DNA of 63,777 nt, filler included, from Reticulomyxa filosa (lineage: Eukaryota; Protista; Foraminifera), in the NCBI GenBank assembly GCA_000512085.1. It is 22 parts of 22 records of this genome, joined end to end, with 100 filler letters (N's around TTAATTAATTAA, not from the genome) between each part and the next. Parts side by side here need not be neighbours in the genome. Positions count along the whole stretch, not along the records: positions 16,886 to 23,699 come from ASPP01002653.1; 21 more parts are not named here. One strand, given 5' to 3'. Below are positions 16,786-23,699 of the stretch, piece after piece (within the stretch, counting starts at the first letter, position 1; every line of letters begins with the position of its first letter). Position numbers and translations under genes: made by a program. The notes under the pieces are model-generated. The model was not told the origin of the DNA, did no database searches, and saw only the letters and a list, made by a program, of their open reading frames with translations.

Positions 16786-17089
16786 NNNNNNNNNNNNNNN
16801 NNNNNNNNNNNNNNNNNNNNNNNNNNNNNTTAATTAATTAANNNNNNNNNNNNNNNNNNNNNNNNNNNNNNNNNNNNNNNNNNNNTGTATTTCCAACAGT
16901 TGACGCAAGATTGGACAATTTTGTGATAAAATTTGAATCAGTAAAAAGACTTCATTTTCAAGAGAGCAAAATAAAAATCAGAACAATATTTGTAATAGAT
17001 TTTCTTCAAAAAAAAAAAAAGTTAATAAATTGTTTATTCTTTTACTTTTATTTTTTTCATGTGAATTACAATAACAAAATACAAAATAG

Positions 17090-17310
17090 TTGACGGCATA
17101 TGTGGAAGTGAATAAAAGAAAAACATTAATAAAAATGAAGAACATACATTTGAAAATTCTTTTGTCAAAATAATTATTGTTTGGAATGGAAAGACATTCA
17201 AAAATTAGAAATGAAAATATAAGGTTTGAATTGGTCAATATGAAAGATAACATTATTGAATCAAACAAAGATATAAAAAGAAAATTTAAAAAGAACAATT
17301 TATTCTGAAA
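17090..17310 (+). pseudogene. Frameshifted copy of the about 75-aa exon module that precedes the caspase-like domain at 21490-21734
   Basis: Same AAATAG acceptor followed by xxAY; exact 17-mer TGTTTGGAATGGAAAGA (CLEWK) shared; NEN..F/LELVNM..NIIE conserved; several frameshifts and a stop. Confidence 0.7.
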
Positions 17311-17658
17311 AGCATTTCTACTTACACAGATTTAATACAAAATTCAAAAATAAGTAACATTCTATTTTTTAATTTCAAAATTTATGCATTATAGAATTGT
17401 TGTTATAATGCAAAGATATTTACAAAATGTAACATTTATCTTTCATTTCAAAATGTTTCTTATGTACATTAATTCAGTTTTTCCTTTATTAAACAAAAGT
17501 TCAACCATTTTTTTCATCTTGCATCATCAAAACATATCAAGAAAAAACTAAAAAAAGCTGAAGAATAACTTAAAATTATCAATGAAAGTTAAGTCTAAGT
17601 TGTCTTTACGTTTTTATTATTTCTTTTATTTAGCGTTATTACGTGTAATTGATATAGT

Positions 17659-18898
17659 CAAAAGAAGAAGAAGAGATCCAAATAATTATTCATTATTGGA
17701 TTCGAACATTAAATATTCAATTAGGATGGATCAAAGATTTTGACAAATTTGTTGTCAATTATGTTAGTTCATTTATTCTTTCTTTTTTAAAACACCAATC
17801 AAATATTCAAATGTTTATTTAATATAGGCTTCTACTATCTTCATGTTTGGCACATTTCGTTCATCATCCAAATTAATCAATACATTCACTGGACATACAA
17901 ATAATGTGTGGAGTATTGATTACTCAACATTTGATGATCGTCGACTCATTTGTTCTGGATCATCTGATAAAACAGTTTGTGTATGGGATGTTGATAACAA
18001 CAAACAAATTCAATCATTCAATGGACATTCAAATGCTGTGTTGTGTGTGAAATTTTCATCATATCATAATCGTCAAAATGTCATTTGTTCTTCGTCATCT
18101 GACAAAACCATTCGTTTTTGGGATTTCAAACATAATAAACAATTACAAATATTAACTGGACACACTTATGCTGTTTATGGTATTGAATTCTCACCATTTA
18201 ATGGTGGTAAATATTTGTGTTCTGGATCTAATGATAGTACTATTCGTTTATGGGATGTTGAAACATCAAAATCATTACATGTTTTCAATGGACATGAAAG
18301 AGCTGTTTGGAGTATTGATATTTCACCATTACAAAGCAATAATAACAATGATAATAATAAAATGAATAATATTGGTGTAATTGGTGGAAATGGGTATACT
18401 ATTTGTTCTGGATCATATGATAATACTATTCGAATATGGGATATTGAAACAACAAAACAATTCAATATATTCAAAGGACATCAAGATTGGATTAGGAGCG
18501 CAAAATATGGATCAAATGAATTAATCAATACAATATTATCTGGATCATCTGATAAAAGTGTTCGTTTGTGGGATATTCGATCTGGTAAACAAATTCAAGT
18601 GTTCAATGGACATACTCATTGGGTATATGCTGTTGAATATTCACCATTTGTAATAAAGAATAATATTGGTAATTCAAATGTGATATGTTCTGGGTCAAAT
18701 GATAATACAATTCGTTTTTGGGATATTCGATCAAATAAGAAGCAATTGTATATTATCAAAGGAAACAAGAAAGAAGATAATGGAATAATTTGTCTTAAAT
18801 TTATTGAATTGAAAAAAAGAGATAAGACAAATAATATCAAATATGATTTGAATTTGTGTTATGGCTCAAATAATGGTCCCATTCGTATTTGGGGATAA
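17659..18898 (+). CDS. WD40-repeat protein (expanded lineage family, about 7 blades)
   Basis: Repeated GH..V..(S/D)..ICSGS.D.TIR(L/F)WD units. Upstream exon EEEIQIIIHYWIRTLNIQLGWIKDFDKFVVNY is joined by a GT-AG intron at about 17763-17828. The 5' end is uncertain. Confidence 0.93.
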
Positions 18899-19132
18899 TT
18901 TTCTTTTTGTTGAATAAGAAATGAAAGTGTTTTTGTTTGAAAAGTTTGATTAAAATAAAAGTGATTTGATTGAACGCACAATGAAAGATTTGTTCTATCT
19001 TACTTTGTTGTTTAAAACTGCGTTCAATGTCTTTTAAAGAATTGAAAAGCATAATAAATGAAAACTGCACTTTGAAAAGAATTAGCTTGTATTTTTGCGA
19101 TCTTATAAAACTTTATTGAGATCAATAGTGAA

Positions 19133-19300
19133 TCATGCATGTTGGACATCAACACAAGAATAACATGCTCTTTGGTCTTCGCCTCCACAAATGAGGTGTT
19201 TGTGTTTGTATACCACACATTGAGATTTTGAAAGTGGAGTGTAAGAGTCGTCGAACTCTTGCAAGGGAATAGGTTTTTGTGTTGTGGTTTGCTTAGCCAT
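19133..19300 (-). pseudogene. Truncated 5' relic of the kelch-repeat family
   Basis: MAKQTTTQKPIPLQEFDDSYTPLSKSQCVVYKHKHLICGGEDQRACYSC then a stop; matches the N-termini at 25786 and 31474. Confidence 0.75.
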
Positions 19301-19899
19301 GTTACTACTAAGTACTTATTTTAAAAAAGGGGGACTGGTGCGACCCTTTTGAACGTTGGTTGAAGTTAATGTTAAAAGGTTAAAAAAAATGGGTGTTTAT
19401 TTCAAATTTGTTTTTATAATTCAAGAAATTGTATGTAATACATTTCAAAAATTTTTGCAATACATAATGAAGTTTTCGCTCTTTTTAGCATGAAAAAAAC
19501 TATTCGCTTAAAAAAGAATAGATGATGCTGTGACATCATAGTGAGCATCACAACAAATCAATGAGACCATAAACAAGCAAAAGCCAAGTCCTTGTCTAAA
19601 AATGATAAAATGGCATTGTTAAAAACTGTGATTGAGGATTTTTTCAAAGGATTAAAGATATTGCATGCTTTTGCATTAATGCAAAGATTTGTCAAATCTT
19701 TATATTACTATCTATTGAAAATGCTAAAGTCATACTCTTAGCAATGCATTAAATTGTTCTTTCATTCGAATGAATATATCCATGAAGATGATATAACATA
19801 GAATGTCTATTTATTAACAAATATAATTTAGTAAATATGACTTTATTTAAGAAAAACAACACAAAAAACTTTTTTTTTCTTTTTGTGGCACAGTTTTTG

Positions 19900-20170
19900 G
19901 ATATGTTAATTTGAATGATTAGAAGCTGCGCAAATGTATGAAATTACTTTGATCACGTAAAAAGAATATATGTATATCAAATTCTGTTGACAAATATTTG
20001 TTAAAATGTATTATAAATCAAGCAATTGAGCCATTTCGTTTTGCAATTTATGTTAGATTGCAAGCATTATTGGGAAATATATAAATCAATGGATATGATC
20101 ATCCTGATATTGTTAAAACATATATTATGGAAGATTTTCCAATATCACAAATATTCCAAGCATTACAAGT
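19900..20170 (+). pseudogene. Possible decayed TPR fragment
   Basis: Fragments NQAIEPF and GYDHPDIVKTY resemble the 42-aa TPR unit; multiple stops. Confidence 0.3.
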
Positions 20171-20735
20171 TGGGAATCCAAATAAAACATCACTGGTATT
20201 CAATGATGATATCTTTTTTTGTGATTGTAATTGAAACGACATAAAACATAAAGAATTCATTTTAACAATAAACTGATAATCAAGTTACTTCTATTTTATT
20301 TCAAAGAAATTGTTATTTATTACAGTATTGAAATATTCTTCTGCAATTATTAAAACGTATATTTATTTGTCTTTTTCTTTTTTTTTGTAATATTCACTTT
20401 TAATTAACATGATACATAATCACTAGGATAAAATCACCATTTTCCCTTTTAATTATGTTTTAAAAATCAGTGTTAAAAGGAATATCGGGTTCTATCTCAT
20501 TCAAATGAAAAAACTATTTGTTTAGTGTAAATACAAAAATTGGGAGAATATTCAATTGGATTTTAAGGATAAATATTTCAGCAAATAACAATACAATTGT
20601 GTTTGCTTGTAAGTTTGAAAAATTTATCGTTTATCAAAATATTTTTCCAGTGACTGCAAATAATGGAATGTAATTACAAAATTTATCTCAAACAAACTAA
20701 TAGTACTGTACAGCACACTTTTTTAAAAAAACACA

Positions 20736-21734
20736 TTAAAGCGTTTTTCTTGAAGTGAAAATGATTTCATAATCAGTTGTATCTTGACTTTCCACACAAT
20801 ACCATTCACCACTTTTATTCTTGCGAATGTCATTTCGAACATCTTGTAGCATTTGCTTGAAAGGATAACCAAGTTTATATTTGGATATAATAATATCTTT
20901 CATACTTTTACTTAACAATGACAAATCACCAACTTGAAATCCTTTTGTTGTCGACCAAACAGTCAAAAATCCATCATCATTATGTCCATATATTGGCATA
21001 TTTTTATTTGGATTTCTACCGAGTACAATTTCGTGTGCTTTTGGAATATTTTGACCACGACAAGCATCAACAATGAATATTTTAGGAAAATCTTTAAATG
21101 ACTCCATTTCATGACAATTAAATGCCATACGTAATTTATCAATTGATACAGTCTTTCCTTCGCTTGTCACAAATGTATTTTCATCATTTCCATGTCCACA
21201 AATAATCATTATTAATCCATCATAATTATTTACATTTTTACGAAGTTTGAAATTGATAATCAATTGATCCATAAAATCTTGACATCTTCTTTTGTCATTT
21301 TTGCAGAGTCATTACACACAAATTCATAATTTAATTCTTCCTTGAATAATTGTCTGAAATTTGTTAATATCTTTTTTTTTCACGTTATGAAGATTACGCC
21401 ATATTGTGTTATCAGTGTATTCACTAATTGCGATCATTACCACTAATGCATTTGTTATTGTCTTTATTTTTCCTATTATTATCGGTCGTTGAAATGACGT
21501 CCAAATTATTTTGAATGAACGGCTATTATTTTCAAATTCTTTCCTTACAGCTTCATCTGTTTCAATAATACTATTTTCCATATTCACCAATTGAAGTTTC
21601 ACATTTTCGTTATTCATTTTTTGAAAATCTTTCCATTCCAAACAAAAATAACTATGACGAAGAAGCTCCTCAAATGTCAATTCTTTCATTTTTATTGTTT
21701 TTTTTTCTTCATCTTGTATGATATATGCTTCAAA
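20736..21734 (-). CDS. Caspase-fold (C14, p20-like) protease domain with an N-terminal adaptor-like module; probably the 3' part of the TPR gene
   Basis: NALVVMIAISEY..L..V..D; IICGHG (His codon 21192-21194); FPKIFIVDACRG (Cys codon 21060-21062); p10-like FLTVWSTTKG. Two 1-nt slips near 21360 and 21280. The frame is open upstream of the ATG to an AG acceptor at 21735. Confidence 0.88.
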
Positions 21735-21900
21735 CTATTTCAAATTTTTTTTTTTTTCTCTCTAATTATTATAAAGCAAAAGACAAAAAAGAAGATAAAA
21801 AAAAAACTTCAACTTTCTTTTCTTCTTCCTTTTTATTTTATTTTTATTTTTTTGTTCAAATTATTTTTGATTTTTGTCTAATTTCAACGAAACAAATAAA

Positions 21901-23699
21901 TCAAACCTGATCAATCTTTTTTATTTTTGATTTTACATCTTGTGTATTCTGATGTTGGTTACCGAATATTTGAGTAAAAATAATTACTGCATCTTCATAA
22001 TACTTTTTTGCTTTGCTTTTATCTCCATTTATAAAATAGACATCTCCTAAAAGAACATAAGTTTCACCAATATGTGGATGATTAGAATCTAATTTTTTTA
22101 ATCTCAAGCTCAATGCCTTTTGTCCAAATTCAATTGATTTGTCCAATTCATTCTTATTTTTAAATGCACTTGCCAAATAATGAAAAGACAGAGCAATAAT
22201 AGGATGCTCAACATGATGCTTCTTTAATCTGATTGTCAACGATTTTTCAAAATGTTCAATTGCCTCATCATTTTTTTCTTCTTTTTCCAATCTAATCCCA
22301 ACACATCATATGAATTTGCAATATTCAAATCAAAACTTCTTTTTACTGTTTACAAAAATTTTCAAAGCTTTTTCAGCATATTCTTTGCCTTTATCCGTTT
22401 GTTCTTTTCCTTTTAGCCACACCAATCCCAATCGATTGTAAGATTTTGCAACAGAACTATCATGTTCCCCAAACTTCTTCAAGAGAATTTTTAAAGCTTT
22501 CTCATATTCTTCAATCGATCTTTCATATTGTCCTTTTTCAAAATATACTCTCCCAAAATTGCAGAATGCGATTGCAACAATGTCACGATTATCATCTAAT
22601 TCCCTTACTCTTATTTCCAGTGGTTTTTCATAGTATTCAATCGCTTTGTCATAGTCCCCTTTATCACAATAAGCATTCCCTAAATTATTATATAAATCAA
22701 CACTATAAATGCCGTTACATTTATCTAAGTACATATTTAATGCTTTTTCATAATATTCAATTACTCTGCTAAATTCTCCTTTACAATTATAAGCATAACT
22801 CAAATTGCAGTATAAGTGTCCACCAACAATGTGATTTTTGCCTAATTTATCTAATACTATTTTCAAGGCTTTTTCGCAGAATGTAATTGCTATGTCGTGT
22901 TCACCTTTTCCATTATAAGAAACTCCCAAACTGTTGTATAAATCAGCAACATCAATATTATCTTCGCCTTGTTTATCTAATCTTATTTTTAGTGCTTTTT
23001 TGTAGTATTCAATAGCGATATCATATTCATCTTTATCATCATAAATACATCCCAATTTGTTATGTGATTTAGCAACATCAATGTGATCTTCACCTAATTT
23101 ATCCAATCTTATTTTTAGCCCTTTTTCACAGTATTCAATTGCCCTATCGTATTCACCTTTTTTCCAATAATATCTCCCAAATCGTAATGTGATTCAGCAA
23201 CGTCAATACTATCTTCGCCTAATCTATCTAATCTTATTTTCAGAGATTTTTCGTAGCATTTAATTGCCATATCGTATTCATCTTTATTCTCGTAAATATT
23301 GGCCAAATTGTTGTATGAACTACCAACACCAATATGACCTTCGCCTAATCTATCTACTCTTATTTTCAAGGCTTTTTCGTGGAATGTAATTGCTATATCG
23401 TATTTATCTTTTTCGTTATAAGCCGCTCCCAAATTGTTGTATAAATCAGCAACATCAATATTATCTTTACCTTGTTTATCTAATCTTATTTTTAGTTCTT
23501 TTTTGGAGTATTCAATCGCTTTGTCCCATTCATTTTTCTTATAATAAATATATCCCAATTTGTTATATGAATTAGCAACGTCAATATGATTTTCACCTAA
23601 TTTATCTAATATTATTTTCAAGGCTTTTTCGTGGAATGTAATTGCTATGTCGTATTCATCTTTTTTATTATAAGCCAATCCCAAATTGTAATATGAATC
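21901..23699 (-). CDS. Tandem 42-aa TPR array (kinesin-light-chain/TPR_12 type, about 14 repeats), 5'-truncated, frameshifted
   Basis: Repeats of ALKIRLDKLGE.HIDVA.SYN.LG..Y..K.EYD.AIEY at a 126-bp period. The three ORFs are linked by slips at A/G runs near 23170 and 22290-22340. Confidence 0.92.

What the first reader, a model, noticed from the sequence alone, without database searches (positions are those of the whole stretch)
20736..23699. Candidate TPR-adaptor-caspase fusion: a repeat-sensor protease system in a protist
Seen: the TPR frame ends ..KIKKIDQ at CAG|GTTTGA (donor 21906). The caspase frame is open upstream of its ATG to AAATAG|TTTGAAGCATAT (acceptor 21735). Both sites are phase 0, so a 172-nt GT-AG intron gives KIDQ/FEAYIIQDEEKKTIKMKELTF in frame; a small internal exon is also possible. 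The product would be at least 14 TPRs, an adaptor module and a caspase fold with intact HG and DACRG. Known: TPR-gated caspase-clan proteases (TPR-CHAT, separase) and TPR sensors of fungal and bacterial NLR-like proteins control cell-death outputs. Inference: a single-chain receptor-protease for defence or localised cell death. I know of no functional description, but cannot verify novelty.
Basis: partly seen in the sequence, partly recalled or inferred. Interest (0 to 1): 0.8.

Follow-up and report, generated by a model that had tools for sequence, protein, structure and literature searches.

The report
Frame-broken TPR–caspase gene copy, Reticulomyxa
This is one more, frame-damaged copy of a large Reticulomyxa filosa gene family in which a TPR repeat "sensor" is spliced onto a PB1-like oligomerisation domain and a caspase-like protease; the architecture is real and already sits unnamed in public protein databases, but its function is untested.

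Summary
The TPR frame ends KIKKIDQ|GTTTGA, and the downstream frame opens at AAATAG|TTTGAAGCATAT. Both sites are phase 0 and lie 172 nt apart. There are 14 TPR units, and the HG and DACRG motifs are intact.

No uninterrupted product can be read from this sequence.

All relatives are Reticulomyxa filosa proteins. Annotated paralogs already carry the same architecture:
- RFI_29501 (1214 aa), 74% nt identity and colinear with the window.
- RFI_04677, RFI_00725, RFI_02778 and RFI_12441.

Their splice sites are homologous to the window's. In RFI_29501 the gap is two introns (73 and 76 nt) around a 36-nt micro-exon. The window has a matching candidate micro-exon at 21828-21814.

The "adaptor" is a confidently modelled beta-grasp domain closest to PB1 and CIDE-N folds. 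Its first two strands lie upstream of the ATG, so that ATG cannot be the true start.

The same beta-grasp+caspase cassette also follows Kelch, TRAF-zf, Ras and HSP70 modules. The S1 pocket lacks the Asp-binding residues of animal caspases.

Verdict: a new, possibly dead member of an annotated but undescribed family. No RNA data were available.

The parts
21907..23699 (-). TPR exon, cut off by the piece's edge. It holds 14 TPR_12-type units ending ...FGNQHQNTQDVKSKIKKIDQ. Three 1-nt frame breaks lie at 23163-23158 (A6), 22335-22332 (T4) and 22288-22282 (gg/aaaaa).
   Evidence: Colinear with L009 exon 1. There are no in-frame stops inside the frame pieces.
21735..21906 (-). AT-rich spliced-out gap. 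Either one 172-nt GT..AG intron, or two introns (21906-21829 and 21813-21735) around a micro-exon.
   Evidence: The donor GTTTGA matches the L004 and L007 donor. The acceptor AAATAG matches L003, L005, L006 and L009. The gap aligns with the intron-microexon-intron stretch of L009. R. filosa mean intron length is 87 bp (PMC13746701).
21814..21828 (-). Candidate 15-nt micro-exon gaagaagaaaagaaa (EEEKK). It is preceded by AG (21830-21829) and followed by GT (21813-21812). It looks like a relic of the start of the helical 'WW' exon found in other paralogs.
   Evidence: Alignment to the annotated 36-nt micro-exon NNEEKKEEKEQE of RFI_29501. Unverified without RNA.
21495..21734 (-). Beta-grasp 'adaptor' domain with a PB1/CIDE-N-like fold. 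Strands 1-2 are encoded upstream of the ATG at 21689.
   Evidence: AF2 pLDDT 85 with beta-beta-alpha-alpha-beta-beta-alpha-beta topology. VIA-align Z 8.2-7.7 to PB1 domains of MEKK3, Bem1p, p62, Par6 and NBR1, and Z 7.5-6.7 to CIDE-N. Foldseek top hit is NBR1 PB1. The ESM Atlas list is dominated by PB1. No Pfam or PDB sequence hit.
20736..21452 (-). Caspase-like Peptidase_C14 domain (p20+p10), including the stop codon at 20738-20736. The His codon is 21194-21192 and the Cys codon 21062-21060. Two compensating 1-nt frame breaks lie within 21365-21356 and at 21280-21278.
   Evidence: Pfam PF00656. Best PDB sequence relatives are caspase-3/6/7. Frame breaks are located.

Best explanation
The stretch is the 3' two-thirds of one multi-exon gene of Reticulomyxa filosa, or a very close relative. 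It belongs to a lineage-expanded family of single-chain 'sensor-caspase' proteins.

The upstream exon encodes a TPR_12 array. That exon is spliced in phase 0 onto a constant cassette, through either one 172-nt intron or, more likely, two introns of about 78 nt around a 15-nt micro-exon. The cassette is a PB1/CIDE-N-like beta-grasp domain followed by a caspase-like C14 protease with an intact His/Cys dyad.

Inferred mechanism (not shown):
- The TPR array binds a ligand or keeps the protease quiet.
- The beta-grasp domain plays the part that CARD/DED prodomains play in animal initiator caspases. It would drive head-to-tail oligomerisation and proximity-induced activation of the protease.
- P1 specificity is probably not Asp.

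This particular copy lacks the helical 'WW' module found in many paralogs, as does its closest intact relative RFI_29501. It also carries five single-base frame breaks. It is therefore either a decaying paralog or a poorly assembled one, and I put that at roughly even odds.
For: Shown:
- All homologs of the caspase piece are R. filosa proteins, at least 60 annotated paralogs. Sixty-eight cluster representatives score E<=1e-30.
- Annotated fusions with TPR_12 + PF00656 are RFI_04677, RFI_02778, RFI_00725, RFI_29501 and RFI_12441.
- Window 23686-20746 is colinear with the RFI_29501 locus at 74% nt.
- That locus has an uninterrupted 869-aa exon ending ..KIDQ|GTTTAG. A 73-nt intron, a 36-nt micro-exon and a 76-nt intron ending AAAATAG| follow, then a 333-aa exon starting FEAYIIV.
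- RFI_04677 joins ..KINE|GTTTGA through an 83-nt intron to QQAYIIVDE.
- In 8 of 8 loci an AG precedes the adaptor exon. The 45 nt before the window's ATG are as conserved as the rest of the exon (0.78 in both).
- That Met is Val in L006 and Leu in L007.
- The 45 nt before the ATG encode strands 1-2 of a confidently modelled beta-grasp fold.
- The fold is PB1/CIDE-N-like in three independent structure searches.
- dN/dS against RFI_29501 is 0.2-0.3 for the adaptor and caspase, and 0.3-0.6 for the TPRs.
- A 2268-nt JGI contig and Bolivina argentea sequences encode Kelch+caspase in a single uninterrupted ORF.
Against: - No RNA evidence for this locus or for any R. filosa paralog could be obtained: no run was listed.
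- The paralog gene models are automatic predictions. Some annotate the sensor and the caspase as separate genes (RFI_26638 and its upstream neighbour on L002; L001).
- Five frame breaks interrupt the coding sequence.
- The beta-grasp domain has no sequence-level link to PB1 or CIDE-N.
- Its oligomerisation, the sensor role of the TPRs and any cell-death output are all inference.
- I did not search or fold the joined (spliced) product as one chain. The exons were handled separately by reference.
Confidence: 0.75

Rival explanations
1. The locus is a pseudogene. The five single-base indels are real, and this copy no longer makes a TPR-caspase protein. This rival concerns the state of this copy, not the architecture of the family.
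For: - Five frame breaks fall in about 2.9 kb, while the closest paralogs have clean ORFs of 869+333 aa (L009), 589 aa (L007) and 328 aa (L006) in the same assembly.
- Two breaks are not in long homopolymers.
- The same piece carries other decayed family fragments: an adaptor remnant with a stop at 17090-17296, and a Kelch-sensor start at 19300-19157 with nothing behind it.
- The WW exon is missing.
Against: - There are zero in-frame nonsense codons in 923 codons, although 6.4% of random substitutions would create one. P(0) is 0.04-0.38 depending on the assumed substitution:indel ratio.
- All breaks sit in mononucleotide runs.
- The assembly is a fragmented draft with N50 3.6 kb (PMC13746701).
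- Other paralog models contain non-canonical pseudo-introns that bridge similar frame slips.
- Loss of the WW exon is shared with the intact RFI_29501 and RFI_04677.
Confidence: 0.5
2. There are two independent genes. A TPR-only protein ends at TGA 21903-21901, and a separate caspase starts at ATG 21689 from its own promoter in the 172-nt gap.
For: - The unspliced TPR frame stops one codon after the donor, here and in L004, L007 and L009.
- An ATG exists 15 codons into the downstream frame.
- NCBI models such as RFI_26638 start at that Met and call the upstream TPR gene separately.
Against: - That Met is not conserved: Val in L006 and Leu in L007.
- The 15 codons upstream are conserved as coding sequence and form strands 1-2 of the beta-grasp fold.
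- The frame opens exactly at a conserved AG.
- Five or more annotated fusion models exist, and uninterrupted Kelch+caspase ORFs occur on a JGI contig and in Bolivina.
Confidence: 0.1
3. The juxtaposition is an assembly chimera of unrelated repeats in a highly repetitive draft genome.
For: The genome is repeat-rich and fragmented. The family has many near-identical pieces: P0001, for example, is 98% identical to the caspase C-terminus but lies on another contig.
Against: The same order, spacing and splice sites recur on at least six independent contigs, L002-L004, L006, L007 and L009.
Confidence: 0.03

Closest known systems
Annotated R. filosa hypothetical proteins: RFI_29501 (1214 aa), RFI_04677 (ETO32440.1), RFI_00725, RFI_02778 and RFI_12441
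   Same: Same domain order: TPR_12 array, then beta-grasp, then Peptidase_C14. The splice sites are homologous. RFI_29501 is colinear with the window at 74% nt. RFI_29501 and RFI_04677 also lack the WW module.
   Different: The window copy has five frame breaks and is truncated by the piece's edge. The gap is 172 nt, against 185 nt (73+36+76) in RFI_29501 and 83 nt in RFI_04677.
Animal initiator caspases (caspase-8/-9/-2) with CARD or DED prodomains
   Same: A homotypic-interaction prodomain lies directly N-terminal to a p20/p10 protease. By sequence the protease is closest to animal caspase-3/6/7/8, as noted for R. filosa by Klim et al. 2018 (PMC5982838).
   Different: The prodomain is a beta-grasp (PB1/CIDE-N-like), not a death fold. 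The sensor repeats are in the same chain. The S1 pocket residues Gln283 and Arg341 are not conserved.
PB1 domains (p62, NBR1, MEKK2/3, Par6/aPKC) and CIDE-N domains (DFF40/45, Drep, FSP27)
   Same: Same beta-grasp topology and best structural matches: Z 8.2-6.7, rmsd 2.0-2.6 A over about 68-71 residues. An acidic 'ESDE' stretch sits where PB1 has its OPCA motif (read from alignment A3; the comparison with OPCA is from my own knowledge).
   Different: There is no sequence-level relationship. An extra helix is inserted after helix 1. Generic ubiquitin-like folds score only about 1 Z unit lower, so assignment within the beta-grasp folds is tentative.
TPR-CHAT (Csx29/Craspase), separase, and bacterial or fungal repeat-containing caspase-clan conflict proteins
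   Different: Here the protease matches Peptidase_C14 (PF00656), not a CHAT or separase family. The protease is C-terminal, behind a beta-grasp domain. No NTPase, CRISPR or STAND module was detected in the full-length paralogs.

Membership tests
Peptidase C14 (caspase/metacaspase superfamily, clan CD) | Match to PF00656 above the gathering score | tested here: met
   46.1 bits against a cutoff of 21.4 for window 20736-21272 alone.
Peptidase C14 (caspase/metacaspase superfamily, clan CD) | Catalytic His-Gly and Cys in the conserved strands | tested here: met
   ICGHG (His codon 21194-21192) and DACRG (Cys codon 21062-21060). Both align to caspase-3 SHG and QACRG.
Caspases proper (C14A, Asp-specific) | S1 pocket Arg179, Gln283 and Arg341 (caspase-1 numbering) that bind the P1 Asp | tested here: not met
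   Asp replaces Gln283 (DACRG). The caspase-3 'YSWR' loop carrying Arg341 is an insertion relative to the family profile. The Arg179 position is His in the window and P/K/R/S in paralogs.
Caspases proper (C14A, Asp-specific) | Closest sequence relatives are animal caspases rather than meta- or paracaspases | tested here: met
   The PDB searches return only caspase-3/6/7/8, E 1e-9 to 1e-7. This agrees with Klim et al. 2018 (PMC5982838).
R. filosa TPR-beta-grasp-caspase family (RFI_29501-like) | Colinear TPR array, beta-grasp and C14 with homologous phase-0 splice sites | tested here: met
   74% nt identity over 3004 aligned columns with L009. Donor and acceptor are homologous.
R. filosa TPR-beta-grasp-caspase family (RFI_29501-like) | Uninterrupted reading frames within exons | tested here: not met
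   Five 1-nt frame breaks. Whether they are real or sequencing errors is undecided.
PB1 domain (PF00564) | Sequence match to the family model | tested here: not met
   No Pfam hit at E<=1. A profile search against PDB found no PB1.
PB1 domain (PF00564) | Beta-grasp fold with PB1 topology | tested here: met
   pLDDT 85 model. PB1 domains top VIA-align (Z 8.2-7.7), Foldseek and the ESM Atlas (TM 0.59-0.65).
PB1 domain (PF00564) | Head-to-tail interaction through a basic and an OPCA acidic surface | not testable with these tools
   An invariant Asp in the 'SDE' stretch and conserved Lys residues are seen in A3. Binding needs experiment.
NLR/STAND-type receptors | Central NACHT or NB-ARC NTPase | tested here: not met
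   Precomputed Pfam for the full-length paralogs lists only TPR families and PF00656. The N-terminal 240-270 residues have no Pfam hit. The window itself lacks its N-terminus.

The most novel reading that the evidence does not exclude
Foraminifera carry a large, exon-shuffled repertoire of NTPase-free single-chain receptor-proteases. A constant cassette, a PB1/CIDE-N-like polymerising prodomain plus a caspase-like protease with a non-Asp S1 pocket, is spliced behind interchangeable sensors: TPR, Kelch, TRAF-zf, Ras and HSP70 in R. filosa, and MATH/SAM in other forams. The system would work as an innate-immunity or self/non-self (plasmodial fusion) death switch that evolved independently of death-fold signalling.
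Probability: 0.25. Interest if true: 0.75.

Novelty: new member of a known kind. Interest (0 to 1): 0.42.

Why it matters
R. filosa is the best-known non-animal organism with animal-like caspase homologs (Klim et al. 2018), and those sequences are used as outgroups in caspase phylogenies. The literature I could search treats them as bare protease domains.

This window and its paralogs show that they are C-terminal cassettes of multidomain proteins. The proteins have repeat sensors and a PB1/CIDE-N-like prodomain, and their S1 pocket does not look Asp-specific.

This bears on how regulated proteolysis and cell-death signalling were assembled outside animals. It also bears on whether these sequences are suitable 'caspase' outgroups.

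The window copy itself adds little. It is a damaged paralog of already annotated genes.

Tried and rejected
- **Sequencing runs.** The look-up of sequencing runs listed none for 20736-23699. No read-level check of the splice or of the five indels was possible, and read laying was not used.
- **Own contig.** An exact look-up of the window's WD40 ORF to recover its contig and annotation found nothing. No protein in any search was flagged as encoded by the window.
- **Adaptor and WW module by sequence.** Pfam found nothing significant for the adaptor, the WW module or the N-terminal region of full-length paralogs. A profile search of the adaptor against PDB sequences gave only chance hits.
- **WW module by structure.** It models as a 4-helix unit (pLDDT 88) with no convincing structural relative, Z<=5.1.
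- **Literature.** The Glöckner et al. 2014 genome paper is not held. One literature query timed out.
- **NLR-like reading.** Considered and rejected, because no NTPase domain is present.
- Considered and rejected. The out-of-frame stretches encode the homologous residues in the shifted frame.
Full report
**What is in the sequence**

The piece 16886-23699 is AT-rich, 22-33% GC. On the minus strand, ORF listing and direct reading show a TPR array in three frame pieces: 23699-23163, 23157-22336 with 22331-22287, and 22287-21907. It ends ...QDVKSKIKKIDQ, followed by GTT TGA.

After a 172-nt stretch of very low complexity (21906-21735), a frame opens immediately behind AAATAG. It reads FEAYIIQDEEKKTIKMKELTF..., with the first ATG at 21689. 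It continues into a Peptidase_C14 domain that ends at the stop codon 20738-20736.

Pfam confirms TPR_12 (E 1e-23 to 1e-45) and PF00656 (E 6e-12). I count 14 TPR units. The catalytic His (ICGHG, 21194-21192) and Cys (DACRG, 21062-21060) are intact.

The coding sequence is broken five times by single-base frame slips.
- FS1 lies in an A6 run, 23163-23158: ..LGDIIGKK / GEYDRAIEY...
- FS2 lies in a T4 run, 22335-22332.
- FS3 lies at 22288-22282. FS2 and FS3 compensate each other.
- FS4 lies within 21365-21356.
- FS5 lies at 21280-21278. FS4 and FS5 also compensate each other.

The stretches between the paired slips encode the expected homologous residues in the shifted frame, for example FRQLFKEELNYEFVCNDSAKMTKEDV. 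They are therefore frame slips and not introns.

**Where it comes from and what its relatives look like**

Every significant hit of the caspase piece is a Reticulomyxa filosa protein. Further word searches and a full HMMER search with a family profile give at least 60 annotated R. filosa paralogs. The HMMER search returned 2854 hits at E<=1e-3, 68 of them at E<=1e-30.

Five paralogs are annotated with TPR_12 and Peptidase_C14 in one protein: RFI_04677 (846 aa, partial), RFI_02778 (1109), RFI_00725 (1101), RFI_29501 (1214, complete model) and RFI_12441 (729).

The same C-terminal cassette also follows other modules:
- Kelch propellers, in about ten models.
- A TRAF-type zinc finger (RFI_37412).
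- A Ras domain (P0190).
- An HSP70 (ETO35864).

I found no paper that describes it. Klim et al. 2018 (PMC5982838) only report that R. filosa has caspase homologs close to animal caspases.

**The junction**

Mapping annotated proteins back to their contigs gives the following.
- RFI_29501 (L009): an uninterrupted 869-aa exon ends ..LKLEKIDQ|GTTTAG. A 73-nt intron, a 36-nt micro-exon (NNEEKKEEKEQE) and a 76-nt intron ending AAAATAG| follow. Then comes a 333-aa exon starting FEAYIIVNQEKK.
- RFI_04677 (L007): a 589-aa exon ends ..LILEKINE|GTTTGA, followed by an 83-nt intron ending ..AACAG|QQAYIIVDETKE.
- RFI_03115 (L004), RFI_34462 (L003), RFI_26599 (L005) and RFI_06001 (L006) have an extra exon for a helical 'WW' module (KWWxERxEKDKxEII..WLL..KW) between sensor and cassette. 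The last intron is 43-102 nt and ends (A/C)AG| before (L/Q)(T/Q)AY(V/I)I(V/M)D.

The window is colinear with L009 at 74% nt from 23686 to 20746. Its donor and acceptor align with the annotated ones. All these junctions are phase 0.

The window's 172-nt gap aligns with the intron-microexon-intron stretch of L009. A candidate micro-exon, gaagaagaaaagaaa (21828-21814), has AG before it and GT after it. It would split the gap into introns of 78 and 79 nt. That is close to the R. filosa mean of 87 bp (PMC13746701) and to the 43-148 nt seen in the paralogs. Either splice pattern keeps the frame. Only RNA can tell which is used.

**Why the ATG at 21689 is not the start**

Across eight loci an AG always precedes the exon. 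The 45 nt upstream of the window's ATG are as conserved as the following 75 nt, with column identity 0.78 in both. The Met itself is Val in L006 and Leu in L007.

AlphaFold2 was run with an alignment of 20 paralog segments and gave pLDDT 85 and pTM 0.71. It folds residues 1-80 of the exon as beta-beta-alpha-alpha-beta-beta-alpha-beta. Strands 1 and 2 are encoded before the ATG, so a protein starting at that Met would lack them. Because the frame is closed by the acceptor's own TAG, an upstream exon must supply the N-terminus.

**What the 'adaptor' is**

It has no Pfam hit and no sequence relative in the PDB. Three structure searches agree on a beta-grasp fold closest to PB1 domains.
- VIA-align: MEKK3 Z 8.2, MEKK2/MAP2K5 8.0, Bem1p 7.8, and p62, Par6 and NBR1 at 7.7. 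CIDE-N domains follow at Z 7.5-6.7: DREP3, Drep4, CIDE-A, FSP27 and CAD/ICAD.
- Foldseek: the top hit is NBR1 PB1 at E 0.013.
- ESM Atlas: PB1 families dominate, TM 0.59-0.65.

Generic ubiquitin-like folds score only slightly lower, so I call it PB1/CIDE-N-like without claiming family membership.

The WW module is absent from the window, RFI_29501 and RFI_04677. It models as a four-helix unit with no convincing relative.

**The protease**

By sequence its nearest solved relatives are caspase-3/6/7 and caspase-8, E 1e-9 to 1e-7. However, the residues that make animal caspases Asp-specific are not kept.
- Gln283 is Asp (DACRG), as in metacaspases and paracaspases (that comparison is from my own knowledge).
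- The YSWR loop with Arg341 is missing from the family profile alignment.
- The Arg179 position is His in the window and varies among paralogs.

I therefore call it caspase-like. Its P1 preference is an open question.

**Is this copy alive?**

For real decay:
- Five slips fall in 2.9 kb, while L009, L007 and L006 have long clean ORFs in the same assembly.
- Two of the slips are not in long runs.
- The piece also holds other dead fragments of the family.

For assembly error:
- There are no nonsense codons in 923 in-frame codons, although 6.4% of random substitutions would make one. P(0) is 0.04-0.38 depending on the substitution:indel ratio.
- All slips sit in mononucleotide runs.
- The assembly is a fragmented draft.
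- Other annotated models contain non-canonical pseudo-introns that hide similar slips.

dN/dS against RFI_29501 is 0.2-0.3 for the adaptor and caspase and 0.3-0.6 for the TPRs. That mostly reflects older history. I leave the odds at about even.

**Beyond R. filosa**

A 2268-nt JGI contig (3300030740) carries one uninterrupted 731-aa ORF with a Kelch-type sensor and this caspase. EukProt entries from Bolivina argentea and Nonionella stella encode the following:
- Kelch + C14.
- MATH + SAM + C14.
- C14 + SAM.
- GGACT + C14.

I take these data sets to be transcriptome-derived (Gomaa et al. 2021, PMC8153729, listed), but that provenance is from my own knowledge. Multidomain caspase-like proteins therefore appear to be a foraminiferal trait. 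I did not see TPR + C14 outside R. filosa among the 150 hits listed.

**Mechanism**

Shown:
- One gene architecture, with homologous phase-0 splice sites.
- An intact catalytic dyad.
- A beta-grasp prodomain.
- Interchangeable N-terminal modules on a constant cassette.

Inferred:
- The repeat array senses a ligand or autoinhibits the protease.
- The beta-grasp domain oligomerises head to tail, as PB1 and CIDE-N do, and brings protease domains together for activation. This parallels CARD/DED-driven activation of initiator caspases.
- The recurring phase-0 intron in front of the cassette is what allowed it to be shuffled behind many sensors.
- The large paralog number and the faster-evolving TPRs fit a conflict or self/non-self role in this syncytial organism. 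Nothing here tests that.

**Limits**

- No RNA data were available.
- The N-terminus lies outside the piece.
- The joined (spliced) product was not translated, searched or folded as one chain.

Noticed in passing
window 17090-17296 (+): A degenerate second copy of the beta-grasp adaptor exon (LTAYVEVNKRKTLIKMK...NIIESNKDIKRKFKKN), with an internal stop and a frame slip. It aligns at 73% nt to L009 4668-4896. No caspase follows it.
   Followed up: partly
window 17691-17783 and 17843-18898 (+): An intact 351-aa WD40 ORF with at least 6 WD repeats. It and a conserved upstream leader segment are 74-81% identical to the WD40 part of P0054. P0054 is an annotated R. filosa model that joins a caspase fragment to WD40 repeats. 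WD40 genes also follow the caspase genes on L001 and L006.
   Followed up: partly
window 19157-19300 (-): Only the first ~48 codons of a Kelch-type sensor (MAKQ..SQCVVYKHKHLICGG..CYS), matching the N-termini of the Kelch+caspase proteins P0057, P0061 and P0192. The rest of that gene is absent.
   Followed up: partly
L004 238-492; L002 1985-2185; L001 4891-5106: A conserved ~60-residue helical 'WW' module (KWWxERxEKDKxEII..F..WLL..KW) lies between sensor and cassette in many paralogs. The AF2 model has four helices and pLDDT 88. It has no Pfam hit and no structural relative above Z 5.1. It is absent from the window.
   Followed up: yes
P0185 and P0186 N-termini; P0187 residues ~60-230: Full-length TPR-caspase paralogs start with a further PB1-like-looking segment (..FKIRDINGQNIDNNQKLRIAF..) and a conserved ~120-residue domain (..VYSFHS..TIDGCVYVIDC..). 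Neither has a Pfam hit. The window would be expected to have these upstream of 23699.
   Followed up: partly
L001 5847-5944; L004 493-530 and 1090-1113; L007 2592-2618: Annotated 'introns' in paralog gene models that lack GT..AG. They evidently bridge frame slips or skip in-frame codons. This shows that frame breaks are common in this family or assembly, and that the public models are unreliable in detail.
   Followed up: partly
P0207, P0151, P0137, P0122, P0164 (EukProt Nonionella stella and Bolivina argentea): Other foraminifera have relatives of this caspase fused to MATH+SAM, SAM, GGACT or Kelch domains.
   Followed up: partly
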